This document shows, piece by piece, positions 6,873 through 42,074 of a stretch of DNA of 64,000 nt; positions within the stretch are counted from its first letter, which is position 1; each line of letters opens with the position of its first letter. A program made the translations under genes and the position numbers. Location: NCBI GenBank assembly GCA_964035545.1, contig OZ037773.1:8833751-8897750 (forward strand), in the 5' to 3' direction. The notes under the pieces were generated by a model. The model was not told the origin of the DNA and did no database searches. It saw nothing but the letters and a program-made list of their open reading frames with translations. The DNA is from Bugula neritina (lineage: Eukaryota > Animalia > Bryozoa).

Positions 6873-9800
6873 ATGGCAAAGCCAAAAGATATTAGGCAGA
6901 TTAAAGTGCTGTCTACAAAGGAAGTTGTGTGTGGATATATGTTACAAAGGTAAAACTCAATTCATACGGGGAGCACAACTTCATAATAAATTGCTGTGTG
7001 TCTTTATTCAATCTGCTATGGTTTTCACTTGCTCAAGAGTGACATAAAATGTAAACTGAAGTAGTGAAAGACTCAATGTTTGAGCAATTTGAAGTTTGAA
7101 CTCTATAATTTCTTGGTAACTGAGTTACTTGTTATAGTTGTTATGCAAGCTTAAACAGTGTAATGCATCAAATGTGTAGCAAACCAATCACTTTAAGGCT
7201 AATAAAATTAGCAAATAACATACTAAATGTTAACGCTAATAAAATGCTTATTCTCTAACTGGGTAGAGGGAGATTATAGGTCTAGGATTTAGCATTCCAA
7301 ATTAATTATAACAATTGTGATACACTGACCCTATAATAATCATGATAAGTAAAAATCATTTCAATTTTTACCTCATTATAAAGACGTGTGATATGTATAT
7401 GTTATGATTTATATAATAGCACTTTAATTTTAACAGCAAATTAATTTTTCAATACACATGTATTGAGTAATATTGTATAGTGCATTGGTTAGTATATAGT
7501 TTTCTATAATCAATACCAAAGGTTGTAGATAAGACAACTTCTCTTGAATTTCTAGATTGTCAGAAGATGCTGACAACTTCTCAAAACAAGTGATGCAATA
7601 TTATGCGGATAAATTTGACTGCTGGACTCTGGATCACCTAGTAAAGCTAAAAGCAAACGTAGAGGATTACCTGCATGCATTTGATTTCCTCCGTGAGTCA
7701 GATATTAAGTAGTTATAAGTTTTGGTGTTAAACTTAACTTGAACAATTTATTAGTTGAATAGAATTAACTTCATTTATAAAGTTACTATATAGATGCTTG
7801 TAAAAAATTGCTAGCTTTAATTAAAGGTAATTGAAATATATCTTTGCTATAATTATTTATTTAATTGATTAAAAAATGAAATTTTGACTGAAATATTTTG
7901 TCAATAACTTCTACTAATAATATAAGTTTTAAGCTCCCCCCCCAATAAAACACTAGTAAAGTAACGCATATGTAACAGACACACAAAAGTCACTTATAGG
8001 ACTGCTTGTCTAACAGGGACTCCCCAGAAAGCATATTTTAGTTGACATATTGCATAATTTAGCAGGATTTAAGAAATTAAGTTACAGGCAGCGTAAGAGT
8101 ATATAACTAGCTATCCTTTCTTACATGAACACTATTTCCAAGAAGTTTGAACCCATGACCTTGTGCTATTTATATTAGGCTGCAGCTGCTACTTATAATA
8201 TATTGATTATTGATATTGATATTGATTACTATTAGAGCATAAACAGTCTAGTGGTCTAGTGGTTAGAGCTTTTGCCTATAAGTAAACAAGAGGTCATGGG
8301 TTCCAGCCCGGACAAACACTATTGGTGATGTTAAGAAAAACATCCAGTCATAATTGCTCCTGTGCCTAATTTAAATAAACCCTTAGCACTTTTTAACAAG
8401 AACTTTTTTCATCACAGGGTTTCTCACATAGATAGCAACTATAAACTTGCATGAGTGATTTCATTAAAGTACAAACATCTTTATTAATACATCACATCAA
8501 CTTTAGACTTGTAGAACTAATGTATACATATGATAAAGTCAAATTTATCTTCAGCCTTGCACAATGCATATTTGTTGGAAAATTTTTTACTTTGCTATAT
8601 AGTGCATGTTGCATTGTTTGATGCCAATCTTTTTACAGTAAAACAGGAGAAGCTTCATGTTGGCAAAGTGCCCAAAGATCTGGACCTCATGACTATGTCA
8701 GAAATTCGACAACACCTGAACAAACATGTCACAGTGACAGCTGTCTCCGAGCTTAAGTTGAACGTAACTTGGTGTGAAGTGACAGCGGTGAGTTTGACTT
8801 GAATGTAACTTAACTGAATTAAGTTTTACTTGAAGTCTGTTGCAAGTTTGGATTGAGTTCTTGAGTATAACGGTTCTATAAGAAATACAAGTTTGGGTTT
8901 TACACGATGTATTCGTTTGCCATAGAGTGAAGAAAATCAATAGAAATAATTATGATAATGTAAGTTTTAATTACATATTATGTTATGTTGAAGCTAAGAA
9001 ATTAATGTGCATGCAGCTAAAGCATTATATTGTGACTCATCTCAATATCAAACTCAAAAACTTATATCAAATTTTCTTCCAATATAAAACCAAAAGTAGC
9101 TACAGTCTATATAGGAAGGTTCCAGCAGATAGTTTTAATACATATAAACTGTCAACTCTAGAAATATTTGTTGAAATTCCAGCTCCTGGAATATGTGACA
9201 AGAGTAGCTTTTGCAATTCTGAACTTTGGTAAAATAAATGAGTCAGTGATGGTTCTGCAGTGGTTCGTAGAGTTCATGACAGGACTACCTATTCTAGAAA
9301 CTTCTGAGGGCTGGGTAAACTTTTACTTTAATTATTTGCAATATATAGCTCTTTCAAAATTTCCATTTTTTATATTAGCTTTTACTAAAATATGTTACCC
9401 ACAACATTGGTTAGGTGTTTTAATTTTTGAAGTTCATCCTTTTGCATAAACAATGCAGTTGTCTAGAAGATAGTGCTAATTCACACATCCTAGGATCTCT
9501 CAAAATTAAAAAATAATTATTTCTATTACTGAAACATCACTATAGTTATACAATTCACCAGTTCTTGTTTGTCATCTATAAGTCCAACGAAATGTTTCTT
9601 ATAATCTTACCATGCCCATTTGTAGAGAGGAGTAACCAGTGTGCTGCTTCGTCTACCTAACTACGCCAGATCATTTGATGAGGAGGAAATAGGGTCATCT
9701 GATGGACCAAAGAGGATTTCCTGTAAACATGTTTCAAGCACCAGTCTTAATATTCAATGTGCTCAAGATAAATCTCAGAGCGCAAAGAAGAGAGCTTCTA

Positions 9801-10096
9801 AAAGAGCTACATCCAAAGTAACATCACGGGACAAAATTGACAAACATCCTTCACAAAAATCTTTGTCAAAAGAATCTTTTTCTAAGAGTAGCTGCAGTAG
9901 ATCCAGCAGTACATTGGTAACCCCATCAGATGAAGCTGTCTTTGAGGCTCCTACATCTAAAACTCCCCCTTCTAGGAGACCGAGATCAAGCTCCAACAAA
10001 GGTGATGCTAATTTAGAACCACCTAAAACTACATCTAAGAAAAGATCTTTCGAGGATATTAAGAAAGGTAGCTCAAGAAAATCCCGCCTCCCTTAG
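6873..10096 (+). CDS. Divergent Bcl-2-family-like protein 1 (~321 aa) with Ser/Lys-rich tail and no TM anchor; exons 6873-6949, 7556-7692, 8639-8787, 9183-9314, 9626-10096
   Basis: In-frame GT-AG model (phases 2,1,0,0). BH4-like STKEVVCGYMLQRLS, BH1-like SELKLNVTWCEVTALLEY, BH2-like ILETSEGW|RGV with a phase-0 intron directly after GW. The family call comes from motif recognition only. Confidence 0.72.
8245..8460 (+). mobile_element. tRNA-derived SINE, family 1 (V-SINE-like core)
   Basis: A-box-like TGGTCTAGTGG and degenerate B-box GGTTCCAGCCC. Core CTATTGGTGATGTTA..CATCCAGTCATAATTGCTCCTGTGCCT is shared with 51925-52130. Confidence 0.7.
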
Positions 10097-11062
10097 TACA
10101 CTACTTTAGGTGATATATAGACATCCTAATTTGCTTAGTTTCATTTTGAATGATCAGCAGTTTGAATAGCCTATCTTTGAAAGTATGTTTCAAAATACCT
10201 TTAGTAAAAATAAAGTTTGAACAAATATTTAGGCCAGCAATTGATTTATGCAAATTTAAACACATAAGTATACTTTCATGTGTTTAAGCAGCTTTGTATT
10301 GTAATGATCTGCAGTTTCTAACCTTAAATAATTTAAATGACTATAATATTCCTGTAAACTTTTATGTTTGGCAAAATTAATTGAAGCAAATAAACTACTA
10401 TAAATGAATTAATCAAATGTGCGTTTGAGTCGTATTTTCATATAACTCATCAGTATAATATCCCTTTCCATGAAACAGCTTGTAAAAAAAAGTGCTAAAA
10501 AATAAAGTCGAGAAGCTTAAAAAATTTGTGAAAAAACAGTTTATTAGTTATGTAATGATGCAGTGAAATAAACTTATATTAATTTCTTCCCTTTTTTGTA
10601 AACTAGCAATAAAAGTTGCTGTTCCTTGGATTCATTACACTGATTATTAGTGCAGGTAGCAGCTACTTAAAAATAGCTTATTACATAAAAGCATTTCACC
10701 AGAATTGAGTAATTTAATTTACGCATGACACAAGTATGTTGCATGAAGTTGCCTGTCATTGGTCAATTTACAAAGGCATTCTATTTACCAGCCAATAGAA
10801 GCTAAGTACACAGTTTTCATTAGCTTAAACTTTGAGAACTACAAAATTCGTATAAAACAACTTTTTGCAACCAGCAAACCTAATAGTTAAAACAAAGAAT
10901 GAATTTATGTTGATTAGTGGCAGCATGTGTTTTATTCACCATACAGAAGAAATAGCATTAGATGTCCGCCAATCAATTATTATGTCAATAGAGAAACCAA
11001 CAAAAAGAATTGCTATAGCTGAAGCCAGTTAGTTGCCTTCTGCTAGACTTGGGAGATAGAGT

Positions 11063-14000
11063 TTATTTTCTTGTCGATTTCTTTCCAGAGCTCCTGTCTC
11101 TCTTTGTCTTACTAGATCCACTACTTGGCTTCTTAGGAGTGACTGATGAGGGAAACACTGTTTTGGTATTTCCAGGAGCTGGCGTGCTGGTAATAGGACC
11201 TTCAGCTTGTTCACTGAATTTTCCAGCAAAGGGAGTTCCCTTGCTTTTGCTCGCAGATGACATAGTTGGCCTGCTGGCACCTAGTCCAGAGTCACCAACT
11301 CCTATATCCATCTGAGAGAGTTTTTCTTGAGCAAGATAATCCAATACCTCAGAATGATGCTCAAAGGATACATTATCTGCCATAGTCTGAAAGTGATAGC
11401 ATAAGTTACACTTTCCAACTGATGGGTCAGTAGCCACTGCGAGATACAGAGAGCCTATAGCTGAACAGTCTGTATTGGCGCACTTTCTCTTGCGGAGAAT
11501 GTTGTTTTGATGTCTATGTTCTGGTTTTACATCACTATCTTTGTCTAGGTCGTGTACCACCATATGCATTTTCATGCATTTCTCAGCCATCAGTTGCACA
11601 CCGCATATAAGACAAATGTATTCTTTACATTTGTTGCATTTAGCAAAGAATTTTCCTTGTCTGGACAGAGTTTTTATGCTGCAGCGTGAACATTGGAGGA
11701 GCCCAAGCATAGGTTCATCATCCTTTGCACAATCAGTTGCGGCTGCTTTAAACTCCGTTGCAGCTAATCTCTTTTTTGTTTTTGGTTTGAGATTTGTTGC
11801 CAGAACATAAGAAGTACTTTCGGAGTCCATAGGTTTCTTTTCTCTTACTGTAGATTGAGCGAGTCCACTATCATCAGCAACATTGGCAAAAGCTGGCGTG
11901 AGAGTTTTGCTAGGGGAGACTTCTATGGGTTCTGGATCCACCTCCATCAGTTCAACAACCTCTCTTTCTGGTGAACAATCCATTGGCAGGCTTGATGGCA
12001 CTATCACATCATACTTCTCTAACGGTTTCACTCTGTTGCTGTTGAACTCTTTAGGCAAGGTAGAGAGCACATCGTGCTACAAAAAGTTGTCAATATACAC
12101 ATTACTTTACAAATCATGAAGTTTAATTTTCACGTAAGTTTGAAAAGCAGGACTGATTAAACTCAAAACTCTGCAATATGATTTGTTTAGATTTGCAAAA
12201 GTTAAAAAAACTTAGATACAAAGACCAATTGTTGTGCGTTCTAGTAATAACAATTTGCTTTTTGGTGAAATTACTAAGTAAGATTCTAAGCACAATTTTT
12301 AAACAAAAACACAATTTCACATCATACTTTGAAGCTGTTATGCCTTTGAGCTGTAAGAGACTTTTTTGTCTAGAAGGAGATATACAGAACTAAAAGAGTA
12401 TAACATGCTAACCCAGCCTTTTGTGGACTTGACTACTTTTTGGTCGTCTAAAAATGATACTAGCATCTCAATCGTTTCTTTTATTAATCCAAACTTTGAT
12501 AATCTGACCAGCTGGCAGATGACATCAGTTGTGAAATGAATCAGCTGCAATATATATAAATTAGTAATTCAGTAATATAATAATACAGTACTATAATATA
12601 ATATGCATTAGCTCGTTCAGTAAATTACTATTTACTATCACACTAAAAAGTAGAAGCTCAATATAATAATAATACCCTGATACCACAATAGAGACATTAT
12701 TGATTTGATATGTTACTACCCTATTACAAAATTTACTAATTATGCAATATATTAGTATTGCAAAATAATAGATGACAAGTTATGCTAGGATCCCCTGAAA
12801 CTGTAAGACCTAATCTCAGGTTGAAAGATGACCCATGACTTTCCTAATCGGTGTCATAAACAGCCTACAACAGTTTTTGCAGAATTCCCTGCCACGGCTT
12901 CCCTTAGAGATTCAAACATAAACACTTCTCAGAGTTTATTGAAAGCCAGTAGAGTCGACTTGTTTCCCTCTTGTCCCTAACACATACACAAGTTGGCCAT
13001 CTTGTCTCTAACACATACTCACACCAGTCATTTTGTCTCATAACATTATGCATGTGTCAGCCATCTTGTCTAGCAAATACTTACGTCTGCTATTTGATGC
13101 CATGTGACTGGTCTTCTATAAAGGTCTGAGTACTGTAAAGTCGGATGCTGATTGTAGTAGTGCTCATATCTTACAGCGTTATCAAATACTTTCTTTGGAC
13201 AAGTCTTGTAGATATTATCTGAAAAAGCAAGTACAAAATACAGCTGGTTTCAATAAGTTCAATTTGTTTACTTAAATGTTTCTATTAGCAGCTTTGAGTT
13301 GGAGGTTGTAAAATAATTGCCCCCACTGGGAATCGAGCCCGAGTCCTCTGGCTTGCAAGCAAGTGTGCTACCATTACACCACGGAAGCCATTGGGTAAAC
13401 ACTACAGAGGTGAATGAGTGCAGTAGTTTGGGGTTTGGGGACATAGCTCCAAACATGCGGGGGGGGGGGGGGGGGGGAGGTTAGGTACCCTCCTAACTAC
13501 TGCACTTATTCACCTCCAACTCGGAGCTGCATATAGAACCATTCTGTTGACTTCCAAATGACAGGGTGTCTATAAATAGATATTAGGTGCTAGCTATCTG
13601 CTACCAGTGACTGCTAATTAGCTGAGCTTTGTTCCCTAGATTATATAAGAGTAAAGCTACTATGTATAGGCCCACGTGCAGAGTGGTGTTTTGTTTCTTT
13701 CAAAATGACTGGTTTTGTGAGAAGGAACATGCTGAGATGGCTTGTTATAAGTTTTCCATAGATCTCATGAAGAGCATAAATAAATAACTTACACTATAGA
13801 CAAAGGTAATCTTGCATCTATTCCAACTAACTTGTATAAGTAGTTTATATTCTTACCTTTGTTGTAAAGAACTTGTATATAGGCATAAAACCTTGCGTAA
13901 TTCCATGGTGAAGGTGCTAAGTGTGTATCTTTGCCTAAACAGTCTTTAAGAATTCTTCTGATCTCTTTTGGTAACTCTCTTTGATCTTGAATTATTCTGC

Positions 14001-14772
14001 AGAAGTCATTGTAGTGTAAGCTAGAGGTCTATTTTCATTTAAACTATTTCAGATATAAACTATATCCACTTAGTACTAAGTAGAACCTAGGTATTATAAT
14101 GCTTGTAATCTCTTACATTCATCTAATGACAAAACTGATCTACATCTGTAACCATGTGGAACTAAACTAATAAAGTAGAGAAATCAAACAAATAATATAT
14201 TCATTCTGTATATTCATTCTGTAACTATAATAAGAATGTTCAAAACTTAAAACTTCTATACTTTTTCAAGAATGTTGAATTCCATAATTTATTAAATTTT
14301 TTTATATGGAATACAGTTATTATAGAAGTTATTCTATTATTAGTATCAGCTTGCGAAATTCATCAGCATTTTAAAATAAATAGTATGTATTTTGGTGTCA
14401 ATTACCATCTTTATAACAAATTAGAATCATGTATTGGAAACTTCATGCGTTAAGGAAGATTTAATGAACAGCTTTTGAAAAATTTTTTTCAAAAGTATTC
14501 AGTATTATTTGGCAGCTGAGGAAAAGAAATATGTTCTAACTATAATTCCTAATATTATAAAATTGCCTTCCTTTAAATTATTTTCCATGTGACTGTAGTT
14601 GATCGAGTACAAAATGATAAGCCTAAATTGACTTCTAAAAAGCAGAGGTAGTTGAACTTATTAGGGTTTTGCATGTGAATTATTGGAAAGACAGGTGAGA
14701 GATATATAGCAGTAGTTACCTGCAGCATACACAGGCCAGGACCACTTGTCTGCTTGTTATAATGTCCGGCAT
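11063..14772 (-). CDS. Divergent Bcl-2-family-like protein 2 (~498 aa) with C-terminal zinc-finger-like region; exons 14772-14720, 14020-13857, 13218-13085, 12544-12413, 12076-11063
   Basis: Same phases (2,1,0,0) and same 132-nt fourth exon as protein 1. BH4-like TSRQVVLACVCCSL, BH1-like SDLYRRPVTWHQIADLIHF, BH2-like VVKSTKGW|HDVL. Tail has CxxC..CxxC, C2H2-like YICLICGVQLMAEKCMKMHMVVH and Cx4C-x18-CNLC. Confidence 0.72.
13305..13406 (-). mobile_element. tRNA-like element (SINE family 2 or pseudo-tRNA), intronic
   Basis: Minus strand GCTTCCGTGGTGTAATGGTAGCAC...CTTGCAAG...GGCTCGATTCCCAGTGGGGGC; anticodon stem imperfect. A second copy lies at 53775-53891. Confidence 0.7.

Positions 14773-29515: not shown

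Positions 29516-42074
<12,559 letters not shown>

What the first reader, a model, noticed from the sequence alone, without database searches (positions are those of the whole stretch)
6873..14772. Convergent pair of highly divergent Bcl-2-fold genes lacking NWGR and the membrane anchor
Seen: two tail-to-tail paralogs with identical intron phases, BH4-like N-termini, VTW in place of BH1 NWG, and GW followed by a phase-0 intron. Known: the intron after BH2 GGW is conserved across animal Bcl-2 genes, BH1-BH2 spacing is similar, Bok has ITWG, and most members end in a TM helix. Here the BH1 Gly-Arg and BH3 GD are not recognisable, and the tails are long, basic and hydrophilic. Inference: soluble, possibly nuclear Bcl-2-fold proteins with a remodelled groove that routine annotation could miss.
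Basis: partly seen in the sequence, partly recalled or inferred. Interest (0 to 1): 0.75.

Follow-up and report, generated by a model that had tools for sequence, protein, structure and literature searches.

The report
Anchorless Bcl-2-derived genes, one with zinc fingers
Two tail-to-tail genes of a bryozoan (Bugula, per earlier scan notes) are real, conserved and very divergent offshoots of the Bcl-2 cell-death family. They have lost the membrane anchor and the usual binding motifs, and one carries a zinc-finger tail, a build I found described nowhere for this family.

Summary
Gene A (+, 6873-10096, 321 codons) and gene B (-, 14772-11063, 490 codons) are convergent five-exon genes with intron phases 2,1,0,0 and a 132-nt fourth exon each.

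Pfam's Bcl-2 model misses them. A profile of their fourth exon matches the BH1-BH2 exon of Pfam-positive Bugula Bcl-2 genes (hhalign 96%, P 3e-9; 300 shuffles never exceed half the score). Three of four intron positions and phases are shared with those genes: inside the Arg codon after the BH4-like helix, five codons after the BH1 Trp, and after the BH2 Gly-Trp.

NWGR is replaced by VTW-CE/HQ. There is no hydrophobic tail. dN/dS against a second Bugula lineage is 0.13-0.29.

They are not an isolated pair. Six tandem paralogs lie on another chromosome and share B's zinc-finger module; A has a conserved basic tail instead.

The 3D fold and the splicing could not be tested: the joined model was not searched or folded, and no RNA run exists.

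The scan noted this kind of gene before on other DNA of this genome (s1-447150, s1-442877).

Verdict: a new variant of a known kind. Soluble, possibly nuclear function is inferred.

The parts
6873..6949 (+). Gene A exon 1: ATG and a BH4-like helix (..STKEVVCGYMLQ + split Arg). Ends in phase 2 inside an AG|G Arg codon.
   Evidence: The e1 profile matches the first exons of canonical Bugula Bcl-2-like genes end to end (hhalign P 1.5e-5; 200 shuffles max 10.8 against 16.9). Those genes have the same phase-2 donor in the Arg codon.
7556..7692 (+). Gene A exon 2 (model). Holds a BH3-position stretch ..MQYYADKF.. seen by eye. Ends in phase 1.
   Evidence: Splice sites and phase only. No significant similarity to e2 of B or of the C2 paralogs. 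No ortholog coverage. This is the least certain exon.
8639..8787 (+). Gene A exon 3. Ends ..NVTWCEVTA with a phase-0 intron five codons after the BH1-position Trp.
   Evidence: Eleven canonical Bugula Bcl-2-like genes have a GT donor at the same Trp+5, phase-0 place. Only the xTWxx[VI] motif aligns.
9183..9314 (+). Gene A exon 4 (44 codons): rest of helix 5, helix 6 and the BH2 position. Ends ..EGW with a phase-0 intron.
   Evidence: hhalign of the family e4 profile against the canonical 47-codon exon: 96%, P 3.1e-9. A alone: P 0.0012. 93% identical in L001, dN/dS 0.14. AF2 of the exon alone gives helices 2-14, 18-33 and 36-40.
9626..10096 (+). Gene A exon 5: 156-codon hydrophilic, basic, Ser-rich tail with stop. 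No TM segment and no zinc finger. Conserved basic C-terminus.
   Evidence: Max KD19 -0.04; K+R 22%. 79% identical in L001, dN/dS 0.29. In the last 36 codons, 7 of 7 differences are at third positions and the stop is conserved. AATAAA at 10209.
14720..14772 (-). Gene B exon 1: ATG and a BH4-like helix (..SRQVVLACVCC + split Arg). Phase 2.
13857..13996 (-). Gene B exon 2. Holds ..ILKDCLGKD.. at the BH3 position (by eye). Ends in phase 1.
   Evidence: Similar to e2 of the C2 paralogs (hhalign P 0.0028; 60 shuffles max 11.6 against 16.4).
13085..13218 (-). Gene B exon 3. Ends ..RPVTWHQIAD with a phase-0 intron at Trp+5.
12413..12544 (-). Gene B exon 4 (44 codons). Ends ..KGW with a phase-0 intron.
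   Evidence: B alone against the canonical exon profile: 80%, P 1.4e-5. 93% identical in L001, dN/dS 0.13.
11063..12076 (-). Gene B exon 5: 337 codons plus stop. Acidic/Pro linker, zinc module, basic Ser/Lys tail. No TM segment.
   Evidence: 89% identical to P0001/L001, dN/dS 0.27. AATAAA on the - strand at 10936-10931.
11336..11707 (-). Zinc-binding module of B: CxxC-x14-CxxC, then a C2H2 finger (CxxC-x12-HxxxH), then Cx4C-x18-CxxC.
   Evidence: Aligns with both modules of the C2 paralogs, with 16 invariant columns, 10 of them Cys or His. dN/dS 0.18. AF2 pLDDT 82.8, pTM 0.73. No PDB fold match below E 0.3.

Best explanation
A and B are two functional members of a family of at least eight genes that arose from the bryozoan's own, greatly expanded Bcl-2 gene family.

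The first four exons (about 165 codons) are the remains of a whole Bcl-2 domain: a BH4-like helix 1, then the helix 5 / helix 6 / BH2 core.
- The ligand-contacting BH1 Gly-Arg is replaced.
- The BH3 signature is degraded.
- The exon that encodes the tail anchor in canonical genes is replaced by a long hydrophilic last exon.

In B and in the six paralogs on another chromosome, that last exon carries one or two copies of a zinc ribbon + C2H2 + zinc ribbon module. In A the module is absent and a basic tail with a strictly conserved C-terminus remains.

Shown: homology, gene structure, purifying selection, absence of a hydrophobic anchor.

Inferred:
- The domain still folds as the Bcl-2 helical bundle.
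- The proteins are soluble rather than inserted in the mitochondrial outer membrane.
- The bundle serves as a protein-binding module with an altered groove.
- The zinc module or basic tail takes it to nucleic acid or the nucleus.

On this reading they would modulate cell fate by sequestering partners or acting on chromatin or RNA, not by forming or blocking membrane pores.
For: 1. e4 profile (A2) against the 47-codon BH1-BH2 exon of 11 Bugula genes (A3):
- hhalign prob 96.1%, P 3.1e-9, all 44 columns aligned.
- 300 column shuffles that keep the terminal GW: mean 10.0, sd 1.7, max 20.1, against 39.4.
- Still 33.1 with GW removed from both.

2. The A3 exons are bona fide Bcl-2. They hit PF00452 positions 56-100 at E 4e-8 to 2e-3, and their upstream exons carry NWGR, NWGK or TWGR.

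3. Three shared intron positions and phases: Trp+5 phase 0, after GW phase 0, and phase 2 in the Arg codon closing helix 1. The post-GGW boundary is the family's hallmark (PMC8998228).

4. e1 profile against canonical first exons: P 1.5e-5, in register to the exon end; 0 of 200 shuffles reach it.

5. e4 aligns in the right register to classical single-exon Bugula Bcl-2: residues 115-149, P 0.024.

6. Purifying selection: dN/dS 0.13-0.29, and A's last 36 codons show synonymous-only change.

7. No TM segment, while canonical L005a keeps a tail-anchor exon.

8. B's zinc module is homologous to those of the six C2 paralogs.
Against: - No exon hits Pfam PF00452 at E up to 10. The locus is absent from the six-frame PF00452 scan and from the canonical-exon HMM scan of the genome. 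The e4 profile finds no Bcl-2 chain in PDB sequences.
- e2 and most of e3 show no significant similarity to canonical genes. The stretch between the BH3 position and the BH1 position looks by eye some 15-25 residues longer than in canonical genes, so an altered or partly different fold is possible.
- The fold was not predicted for the joined domain.
- No RNA evidence for any splice joint: the only run holding the locus is DNA.
- Localisation and binding are pure inference.
Confidence: 0.8

Rival explanations
1. Mosaic gene. Only the first exon and the e3-end/e4 block derive from a Bcl-2 gene. e2 and most of e3 are unrelated or newly evolved sequence. The N-terminal region does not form a Bcl-2 bundle and is some other helical domain ahead of zinc fingers.
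For: e2 and e3 profiles give nothing against canonical Bcl-2 beyond the TW motif. The stretch between the BH3 and BH1 positions looks by eye longer than in canonical genes. There are weak SAP / DEK_C / Rho_N-type Pfam hits in e3 of A and of the C2 paralog (E 0.07-0.11).
Against: Shared homology and intron positions bracket the whole region: e1 at one end, Trp+5 and GW at the other. That is most simply explained by descent of the entire domain. The canonical Bugula exons are themselves extremely diverse in this stretch. Total domain length fits a Bcl-2 fold. The weak Pfam hits are far below their cut-offs.
Confidence: 0.12
2. The exon models are wrong or the genes are decaying: unexpressed relics, or exons wrongly chained. 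In that case no such proteins are made.
For: No RNA run holds the locus. A's e2 has no similarity support. No full-length protein of this family is in the protein collections searched.
Against: Open frames and consensus splice sites are intact in eight paralogs with identical phases. dN/dS is 0.13-0.29 against a lineage whose introns are 79-87% identical. Change in A's C-terminus is synonymous only, with a conserved stop. The convergent arrangement is kept in the second lineage.
Confidence: 0.05
3. They are ordinary membrane-anchored Bcl-2 regulators whose tail-anchor exon was missed, reached through an alternative donor inside e5 or a downstream exon.
For: Canonical relatives have a separate tail-anchor exon after the GGW intron. 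AT-rich flanks hold many short hydrophobic frames.
Against: e5 begins at the post-GW acceptor and stays open for 156 codons (A) and 337 codons (B). It is under purifying selection right up to a conserved stop. AATAAA follows 113-127 nt after each stop. The two genes' ends are only 966 bp apart.
Confidence: 0.03

Closest known systems
Bugula's own Pfam-positive Bcl-2-like genes with an intron five codons after the BH1 Trp (for example loci L005, L022, L024, L027, L028; at least 11 genes)
   Same: - First exon ends in a BH4-like helix with a phase-2 intron in the Arg codon.
- Phase-0 intron at Trp+5.
- A 44-52 codon exon ends in G-W plus a phase-0 intron.
- Profile-profile homology of that exon and of exon 1.
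- BH1 is already relaxed in some of them (SWQR, SWPQ, TWER, TWTK).
   Different: - Those genes are detected by PF00452, and at least one keeps a tail-anchor exon.
- A and B are not detected.
- In A and B e4 is three codons shorter, before the G-W end.
- A and B have an extra phase-1 intron, or one not yet matched.
- They end in a long hydrophilic exon with a zinc module (B) or a basic tail (A).
[quoted passage not shown]
   Same: - Order BH4-like helix, BH3 position, BH1 Trp, BH2 G-W.
- Trp-to-Trp spacing of 49 residues against 52 in the Bugula genes.
- Exon boundary right after the BH2 Trp (PMC8998228).
- e4 aligns in register to classical Bugula Bcl-2.
   Different: - No NWGR Gly-Arg and no clear LxxxGD.
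- No C-terminal TM helix.
- Below every sequence-model threshold.
- A zinc-finger tail is not a known Bcl-2 architecture as far as my searches show.
Anchorless or atypical vertebrate members (BCL2L12, BCL2L14/Bcl-G, BCL2L15/Bfk, BCL2L13/Bcl-rambo). From my own knowledge, not tested here.
   Same: Partial sets of BH motifs. Some lack the TM helix and are cytosolic or nuclear. Bcl-rambo has a long extension after BH2.
   Different: No evidence of orthology. Those proteins have no zinc fingers. The bryozoan genes arose within a lineage-specific expansion.
Poxviral Bcl-2-fold proteins without recognisable BH motifs (for example vaccinia N1, myxoma M11L)
   Same: The Bcl-2 fold is kept with little detectable sequence identity. 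In N1 it is used for a non-apoptotic task, NF-kB signalling, through another surface (PMC7022251). This is a precedent for a repurposed bundle.
   Different: Those are viral, single-domain and intronless. Here homology to cellular genes is still traceable through gene structure.

Membership tests
Bcl-2 family (Pfam PF00452 / Bcl-2 fold) | Match to the Pfam Bcl-2 model at or above its cut-off (31.4 bits) | tested here: not met
   No exon of A, B or the C2 paralog hits PF00452 at E up to 10. The locus is absent from the six-frame scan of the genome. Equal-sized canonical exons score 19-34 bits. The joined protein was not scanned (rule).
Bcl-2 family (Pfam PF00452 / Bcl-2 fold) | Homology to bona fide members over the helix 5 / helix 6 / BH2 core | tested here: met
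   hhalign A2 against A3: 96.1%, P 3.1e-9, 44 of 44 columns. Shuffles max 20.1 against 39.4.
Bcl-2 family (Pfam PF00452 / Bcl-2 fold) | Exon boundary directly after the BH2 GGW Trp, phase 0 | tested here: met
   EGW|gt in A and KGW|gt in B, phase 0. The same holds in the canonical Bugula genes. Hallmark described in PMC8998228.
Bcl-2 family (Pfam PF00452 / Bcl-2 fold) | BH1 motif NWGR (the Gly-Arg contacts the BH3 ligand) | tested here: not met
   VTWCE in A, VTWHQ in B, ITWLQ in the C2 paralogs. Only the Trp and its place relative to the intron are kept.
Bcl-2 family (Pfam PF00452 / Bcl-2 fold) | BH3 motif LxxxGDE | tested here: inconclusive
   By eye: YADKF (A), CLGKD (B), CGNRK (C2), against VGKD / VGNR in canonical Bugula genes. 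Profile comparison of e2 is not significant.
Bcl-2 family (Pfam PF00452 / Bcl-2 fold) | BH4-type first helix | tested here: met
   e1 profile against the first exons of L027, L028 and L005: P 1.5e-5, and 0 of 200 shuffles reach it. Same phase-2 intron.
Bcl-2 family (Pfam PF00452 / Bcl-2 fold) | C-terminal transmembrane tail anchor | tested here: not met
   Max KD19 is -0.04 (A e5) and 1.09 (B e5, inside the zinc finger). Tails are basic and conserved up to the stop.
Bcl-2 family (Pfam PF00452 / Bcl-2 fold) | Eight-helix globular bundle with a central hydrophobic hairpin | not testable with these tools
   The joined spliced model was not folded or searched, and no full-length protein is in the collections. 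e4 alone is predicted as helices 2-14, 18-33 and 36-40 at pLDDT 67. That fits helices 5-7 but does not prove the fold.
C2H2 zinc finger (module in B e5) | CX2-4C-X12-HX3-5H spacing and similarity to known fingers | tested here: met
   CLIC-x12-H-x3-H in B. Profile positions 30-55 hit many poly-C2H2 proteins. No Pfam zinc-finger model reaches its cut-off. The flanking C4 units have no significant fold match.

The most novel reading that the evidence does not exclude
A Bcl-2-fold domain has been recruited as the N-terminal partner-binding domain of zinc-finger, nucleic-acid-associated proteins. This would be a new class of nuclear Bcl-2-domain regulators that couples death or survival signalling directly to chromatin or RNA. 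It would have evolved inside the very large Bcl-2 expansion of a colonial animal that cyclically destroys and rebuilds its zooids' polypides.
Probability: 0.2. Interest if true: 0.8.

Novelty: new variant of a known kind. Interest (0 to 1): 0.55.

Why it matters
Bcl-2 proteins are defined by a fold, a BH3-binding groove and, for most, a membrane anchor. Work on them centres on the mitochondrial outer membrane.

Here homology is still traceable through gene structure even though every sequence model fails. An animal has kept the domain under selection while removing the anchor and the groove's signature residues. In seven of eight copies it has joined the domain to a zinc-finger module.

If the proteins are made and fold as expected, they are a natural experiment on what a Bcl-2 bundle can do away from membranes. 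The only comparable precedents I know are viral.

The finding also shows that exon-level profile comparison plus intron positions can recover family members that domain scans miss. The true size of Bcl-2 expansions in lophotrochozoans may therefore be underestimated.

Tried and rejected
Sequence and profile searches
- Pfam on every exon: no Bcl-2 hit.
- PF00452 and the canonical-exon HMM over the whole genome: the locus is not hit.
- e4 profile against PDB sequences: only a designed repeat protein and IFIT2, no Bcl-2.
- Single-exon searches of the genome find only the exon itself.
- hhalign of the e1, e2 and e3 profiles against classical single-exon Bugula Bcl-2 (A4): nothing.
- e3 against the canonical upstream exon: only the six-residue TW motif.
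- ESM Atlas look-alikes of A e4: unnamed clusters only.

Structure
- AF2 of e4 alone: pLDDT 67. Foldseek finds one designed protein at E 9.
- AF2 of B's zinc module: good model. Foldseek PDB gives nothing below E 0.3; the weak rows are RBR/IBR zinc domains, ribosomal zinc ribbons and Kaiso.

Search for a full-length protein, so that the domain could be folded by reference
- Word searches with B e5, with the C2 paralog's e5 and with a classical Bcl-2 returned only genomic last-exon ORFs.
- The full-library profile search with the zinc module returned family fragments plus generic C2H2 proteins.
- Contigs of P0008 and P0045 are too short to show upstream exons.

RNA evidence
- The one run that holds the locus is DNA and shows no splice joints.

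Not established
- Whether the phase-1 e2|e3 intron is shared with canonical genes; the acceptors are ambiguous.

- Any search, scan, fold or comparison of the joined (spliced) protein model.
Full report
**What is in the sequence**

The window is AT-rich eukaryotic DNA. Earlier notes of this scan name the genome as the bryozoan Bugula neritina; I did not test that.

Between 6873 and 14772 two genes converge.
- Gene A, + strand: exons 6873-6949, 7556-7692, 8639-8787, 9183-9314, 9626-10096 (321 codons).
- Gene B, - strand: exons 14772-14720, 13996-13857, 13218-13085, 12544-12413, 12076-11063 (490 codons).

All boundaries are AG|..|GT. Intron phases are 2,1,0,0 in both genes, and exon 4 is 132 nt in both. 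The stops are 966 bp apart, and an AATAAA follows each by 113-127 nt.

- a first exon ending in a helix-like ..KEVVCGYMLQ|R (A) and ..RQVVLACVCC|R (B);
- VTW five codons before the end of exon 3;
- G-W as the last two codons of exon 4.

**Are they real genes?**

A 4.1-kb Logan contig from another sample (L001) is 81-88% identical in DNA. It carries exons 4-5 of both genes in the same convergent arrangement.
- Exon 4 is 93% identical in protein in both genes, with dN/dS 0.13-0.14.
- The last exons give dN/dS 0.27-0.29.
- The adjacent introns are 79-87% identical.
- The last 36 codons of A differ at seven sites, all at third positions, and the stop is conserved.

So both genes are under purifying selection up to their stops.

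No RNA evidence could be had. The only public run that holds the locus is DNA, and its contigs show no splice joints (I laid 5,801 letters, within the operators' limit).

**Standard detection fails**
- None of the exon translations hits Pfam Bcl-2 at E up to 10.
- A six-frame PF00452 scan of the whole genome gives 29 matches, none at this locus.
- A profile of exon 4 finds no Bcl-2 chain among PDB sequences.
- Each exon 4 finds only itself in the genome.

**A larger family**

A profile of the two exon-4 sequences and their L001 orthologs (A1) picked up six full-length 132-nt matches in tandem on another chromosome, C2:27456483-27487056. Each is flanked by AG and GT and ends ..TSKGW.

These genes have the same five-exon plan and phases:
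- first exon ..SKEIILACLVQ|R;
- exon 3 ending ..NITWLQVLD|;
- a 351-codon last exon with two Cys/His modules.

A wider profile (A2) finds exactly these eight loci in the assembly.

B's Cys/His region aligns with both modules of those paralogs, with 16 invariant columns. The zinc-finger tail is therefore a family trait and A is the exception.

This looks like the same family, so the scan has seen this kind before on other DNA.

**Link to Bcl-2: exon 4**

I fetched the PF00452-positive loci of this genome. Eleven of them have a 47-52 codon exon that starts in phase 0 and ends GGW|gt in phase 0.

As isolated exons they hit PF00452 positions 56-100 at E 4e-8 to 2e-3, which serves as a positive control.

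Profile-profile comparison of our exon 4 (A2) with these exons (A3):
- probability 96.1%, P 3.1e-9, all 44 columns aligned, one three-residue gap;
- 300 column shuffles that keep the terminal GW score 10.0 +/- 1.7, max 20.1, against 39.4;
- the reversed profile scores 11.3;
- with GW removed from both the score is still 33.1;
- lineages alone give P 0.0012 (A), 1.4e-5 (B) and 3.5e-6 (C2).

Against classical single-exon Bugula Bcl-2 the match is weak but in the right register: residues 115-149, P 0.024.

**Link to Bcl-2: gene structure**
- In the same eleven canonical genes the upstream exon ends exactly five codons after the BH1 Trp, with a GT donor in phase 0 (WGRLAI|gt, WGKLVL|gt, WQRIIM|gt and others). 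A (WCEVTA|gt), B (WHQIAD|gt) and the C2 genes (WLQVLD|gt) do the same.
- Three canonical genes whose 5' parts were in the fetched loci have a first coding exon ending ..TKDVAIAYMMQ|R..TRDVVACYAWH|R or ..TKELLLHYIRY|R. Each has a phase-2 donor inside the AGG Arg codon, the same place and phase as our e1|e2.
- The last 14 columns of our exon-1 profile align end to end with these: P 1.5e-5, score 16.9; 200 shuffles max 10.8.
- With the post-GW intron, which is the family hallmark (PMC8998228), three of four intron positions are shared.
- Whether the phase-1 e2|e3 intron is shared could not be settled.

**What does not match**
- Exon 2 and most of exon 3 show no significant similarity to canonical genes. 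Only xTWxx[VI] aligns.
- Among the three lineages, exon 3 is marginal. Exon 2 is similar only between B and the C2 genes. A's exon 2 rests on splice sites alone.
- The BH1 Gly-Arg is gone.
- A BH3-like LGKD / CGNR / YADK can be seen by eye at the expected place but cannot be tested.
- The canonical Bugula exons are themselves extremely diverse here, and several already have relaxed BH1 motifs.

**Tails**
- No 19-residue window reaches TM-like hydropathy: -0.04 in A, and 1.09 in B, where it lies inside the zinc finger.
- A canonical relative (L005a) still has a short tail-anchor exon.
- B's module reads CxxC-x14-CxxC, then a C2H2 finger, then Cx4C-x18-CxxC.
- AF2 models it with pLDDT 82.8 as small beta-hairpin/helix zinc units. 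Foldseek finds nothing significant in the PDB.
- A profile of the module searched against 1.84 billion representatives found only family fragments (P0001, P0003, P0006), two short relatives from other samples (P0008, P0045), and generic C2H2 arrays matching the single finger. Contigs of the two relatives are too short to show what lies upstream.

**What I did not do**

The joined protein was not scanned, searched, compared or folded.

No full-length protein of the family exists in the collections that could have stood in for it. The Bcl-2 fold of the whole domain is therefore inferred from homology, not predicted.

Exon 4 alone folds as helices 2-14, 18-33 and 36-40 at pLDDT 67. That agrees with helices 5-7 of Bcl-xL as I remember them. 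It is not discriminating, and Foldseek on it gave nothing.

**Reading**

A and B descend from the bryozoan's own Bcl-2 expansion, which has at least 34 BH1-BH2-type exons in the genome.

Shown: they kept the domain under selection, lost the anchor and the groove's signature residues, and gained a hydrophilic last exon.

Inferred: they act as soluble, probably nuclear or nucleic-acid-associated proteins in which the bundle is a partner-binding module. Precedents for a Bcl-2 fold with no detectable motifs and with non-apoptotic tasks are viral (PMC7022251).

I found no paper on bryozoan Bcl-2 genes or on a Bcl-2/zinc-finger architecture.

**Verdict**

This is a new variant of a known kind. Interest is moderate to high for the Bcl-2 field. 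It is tempered by the missing RNA and structure, and by the fact that the scan has already noted sister loci.

Noticed in passing
G000:C2:27456483-27487056 (loci L008-L012): Tandem array of six near-identical paralogs (85-95% protein identity in exons 1-4), each with the N-terminal Bcl-2-derived domain and a 351-codon last exon carrying two zinc modules. A truncated e5-like remnant with an in-frame stop lies between copies (L010:398-584 and L009:9621-9847).
   Followed up: partly
G000, for example C8:9.87-9.94 Mb, C3:19.93 Mb, C3:7.51 Mb: The genome holds at least 34 exons of the BH1-BH2 type, many clustered on C8. Eleven checked genes share an intron five codons after the BH1 Trp, and several have relaxed BH1 motifs (SWQR, SWPQ, TWER, NWIT).
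   Followed up: partly
window 13318-13388 (-) and about 8240-8470: A tRNA-like element sits in intron 2 of gene B (Rfam tRNA 36.2 bits; not called by ARAGORN). A related tRNA-derived repeat sits in intron 2 of gene A, with contig depth about 77,000 in run X1 against about 70 nearby. This is probably a very abundant SINE. A run of about 22 G lies at 13459-13480.
   Followed up: no
window about 32000-38000: A GC-rich block (46-51% GC against 30-36% around it) has no ORF over 140 codons. A 2-kb sample of it has at least 47 diverged copies (67-79% identity) across the chromosomes. It looks like an old, degraded dispersed repeat.
   Followed up: partly
window 8641-8787 (+) and L010:2195-2323: Exon 3 of A and of the C2 paralog gives weak, sub-threshold Pfam hits to small helix-extended-helix DNA/RNA-binding motifs: DEK_C E 0.068, SAP E 0.082, Rho_N E 0.11. 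These may be chance.
   Followed up: no
L033 (Logan SRR4020080) and L032 (ENA ERZ23500781): Short contigs from other samples encode relatives of the zinc module (P0008 with two modules, P0045 with one). The module therefore exists outside this assembly. What lies upstream of it there is unknown.
   Followed up: partly
L001:1636-1648: In the second Bugula lineage, B's ortholog has a stop four codons before the window's stop (..SSGKK*), slightly shortening the basic tail.
   Followed up: no
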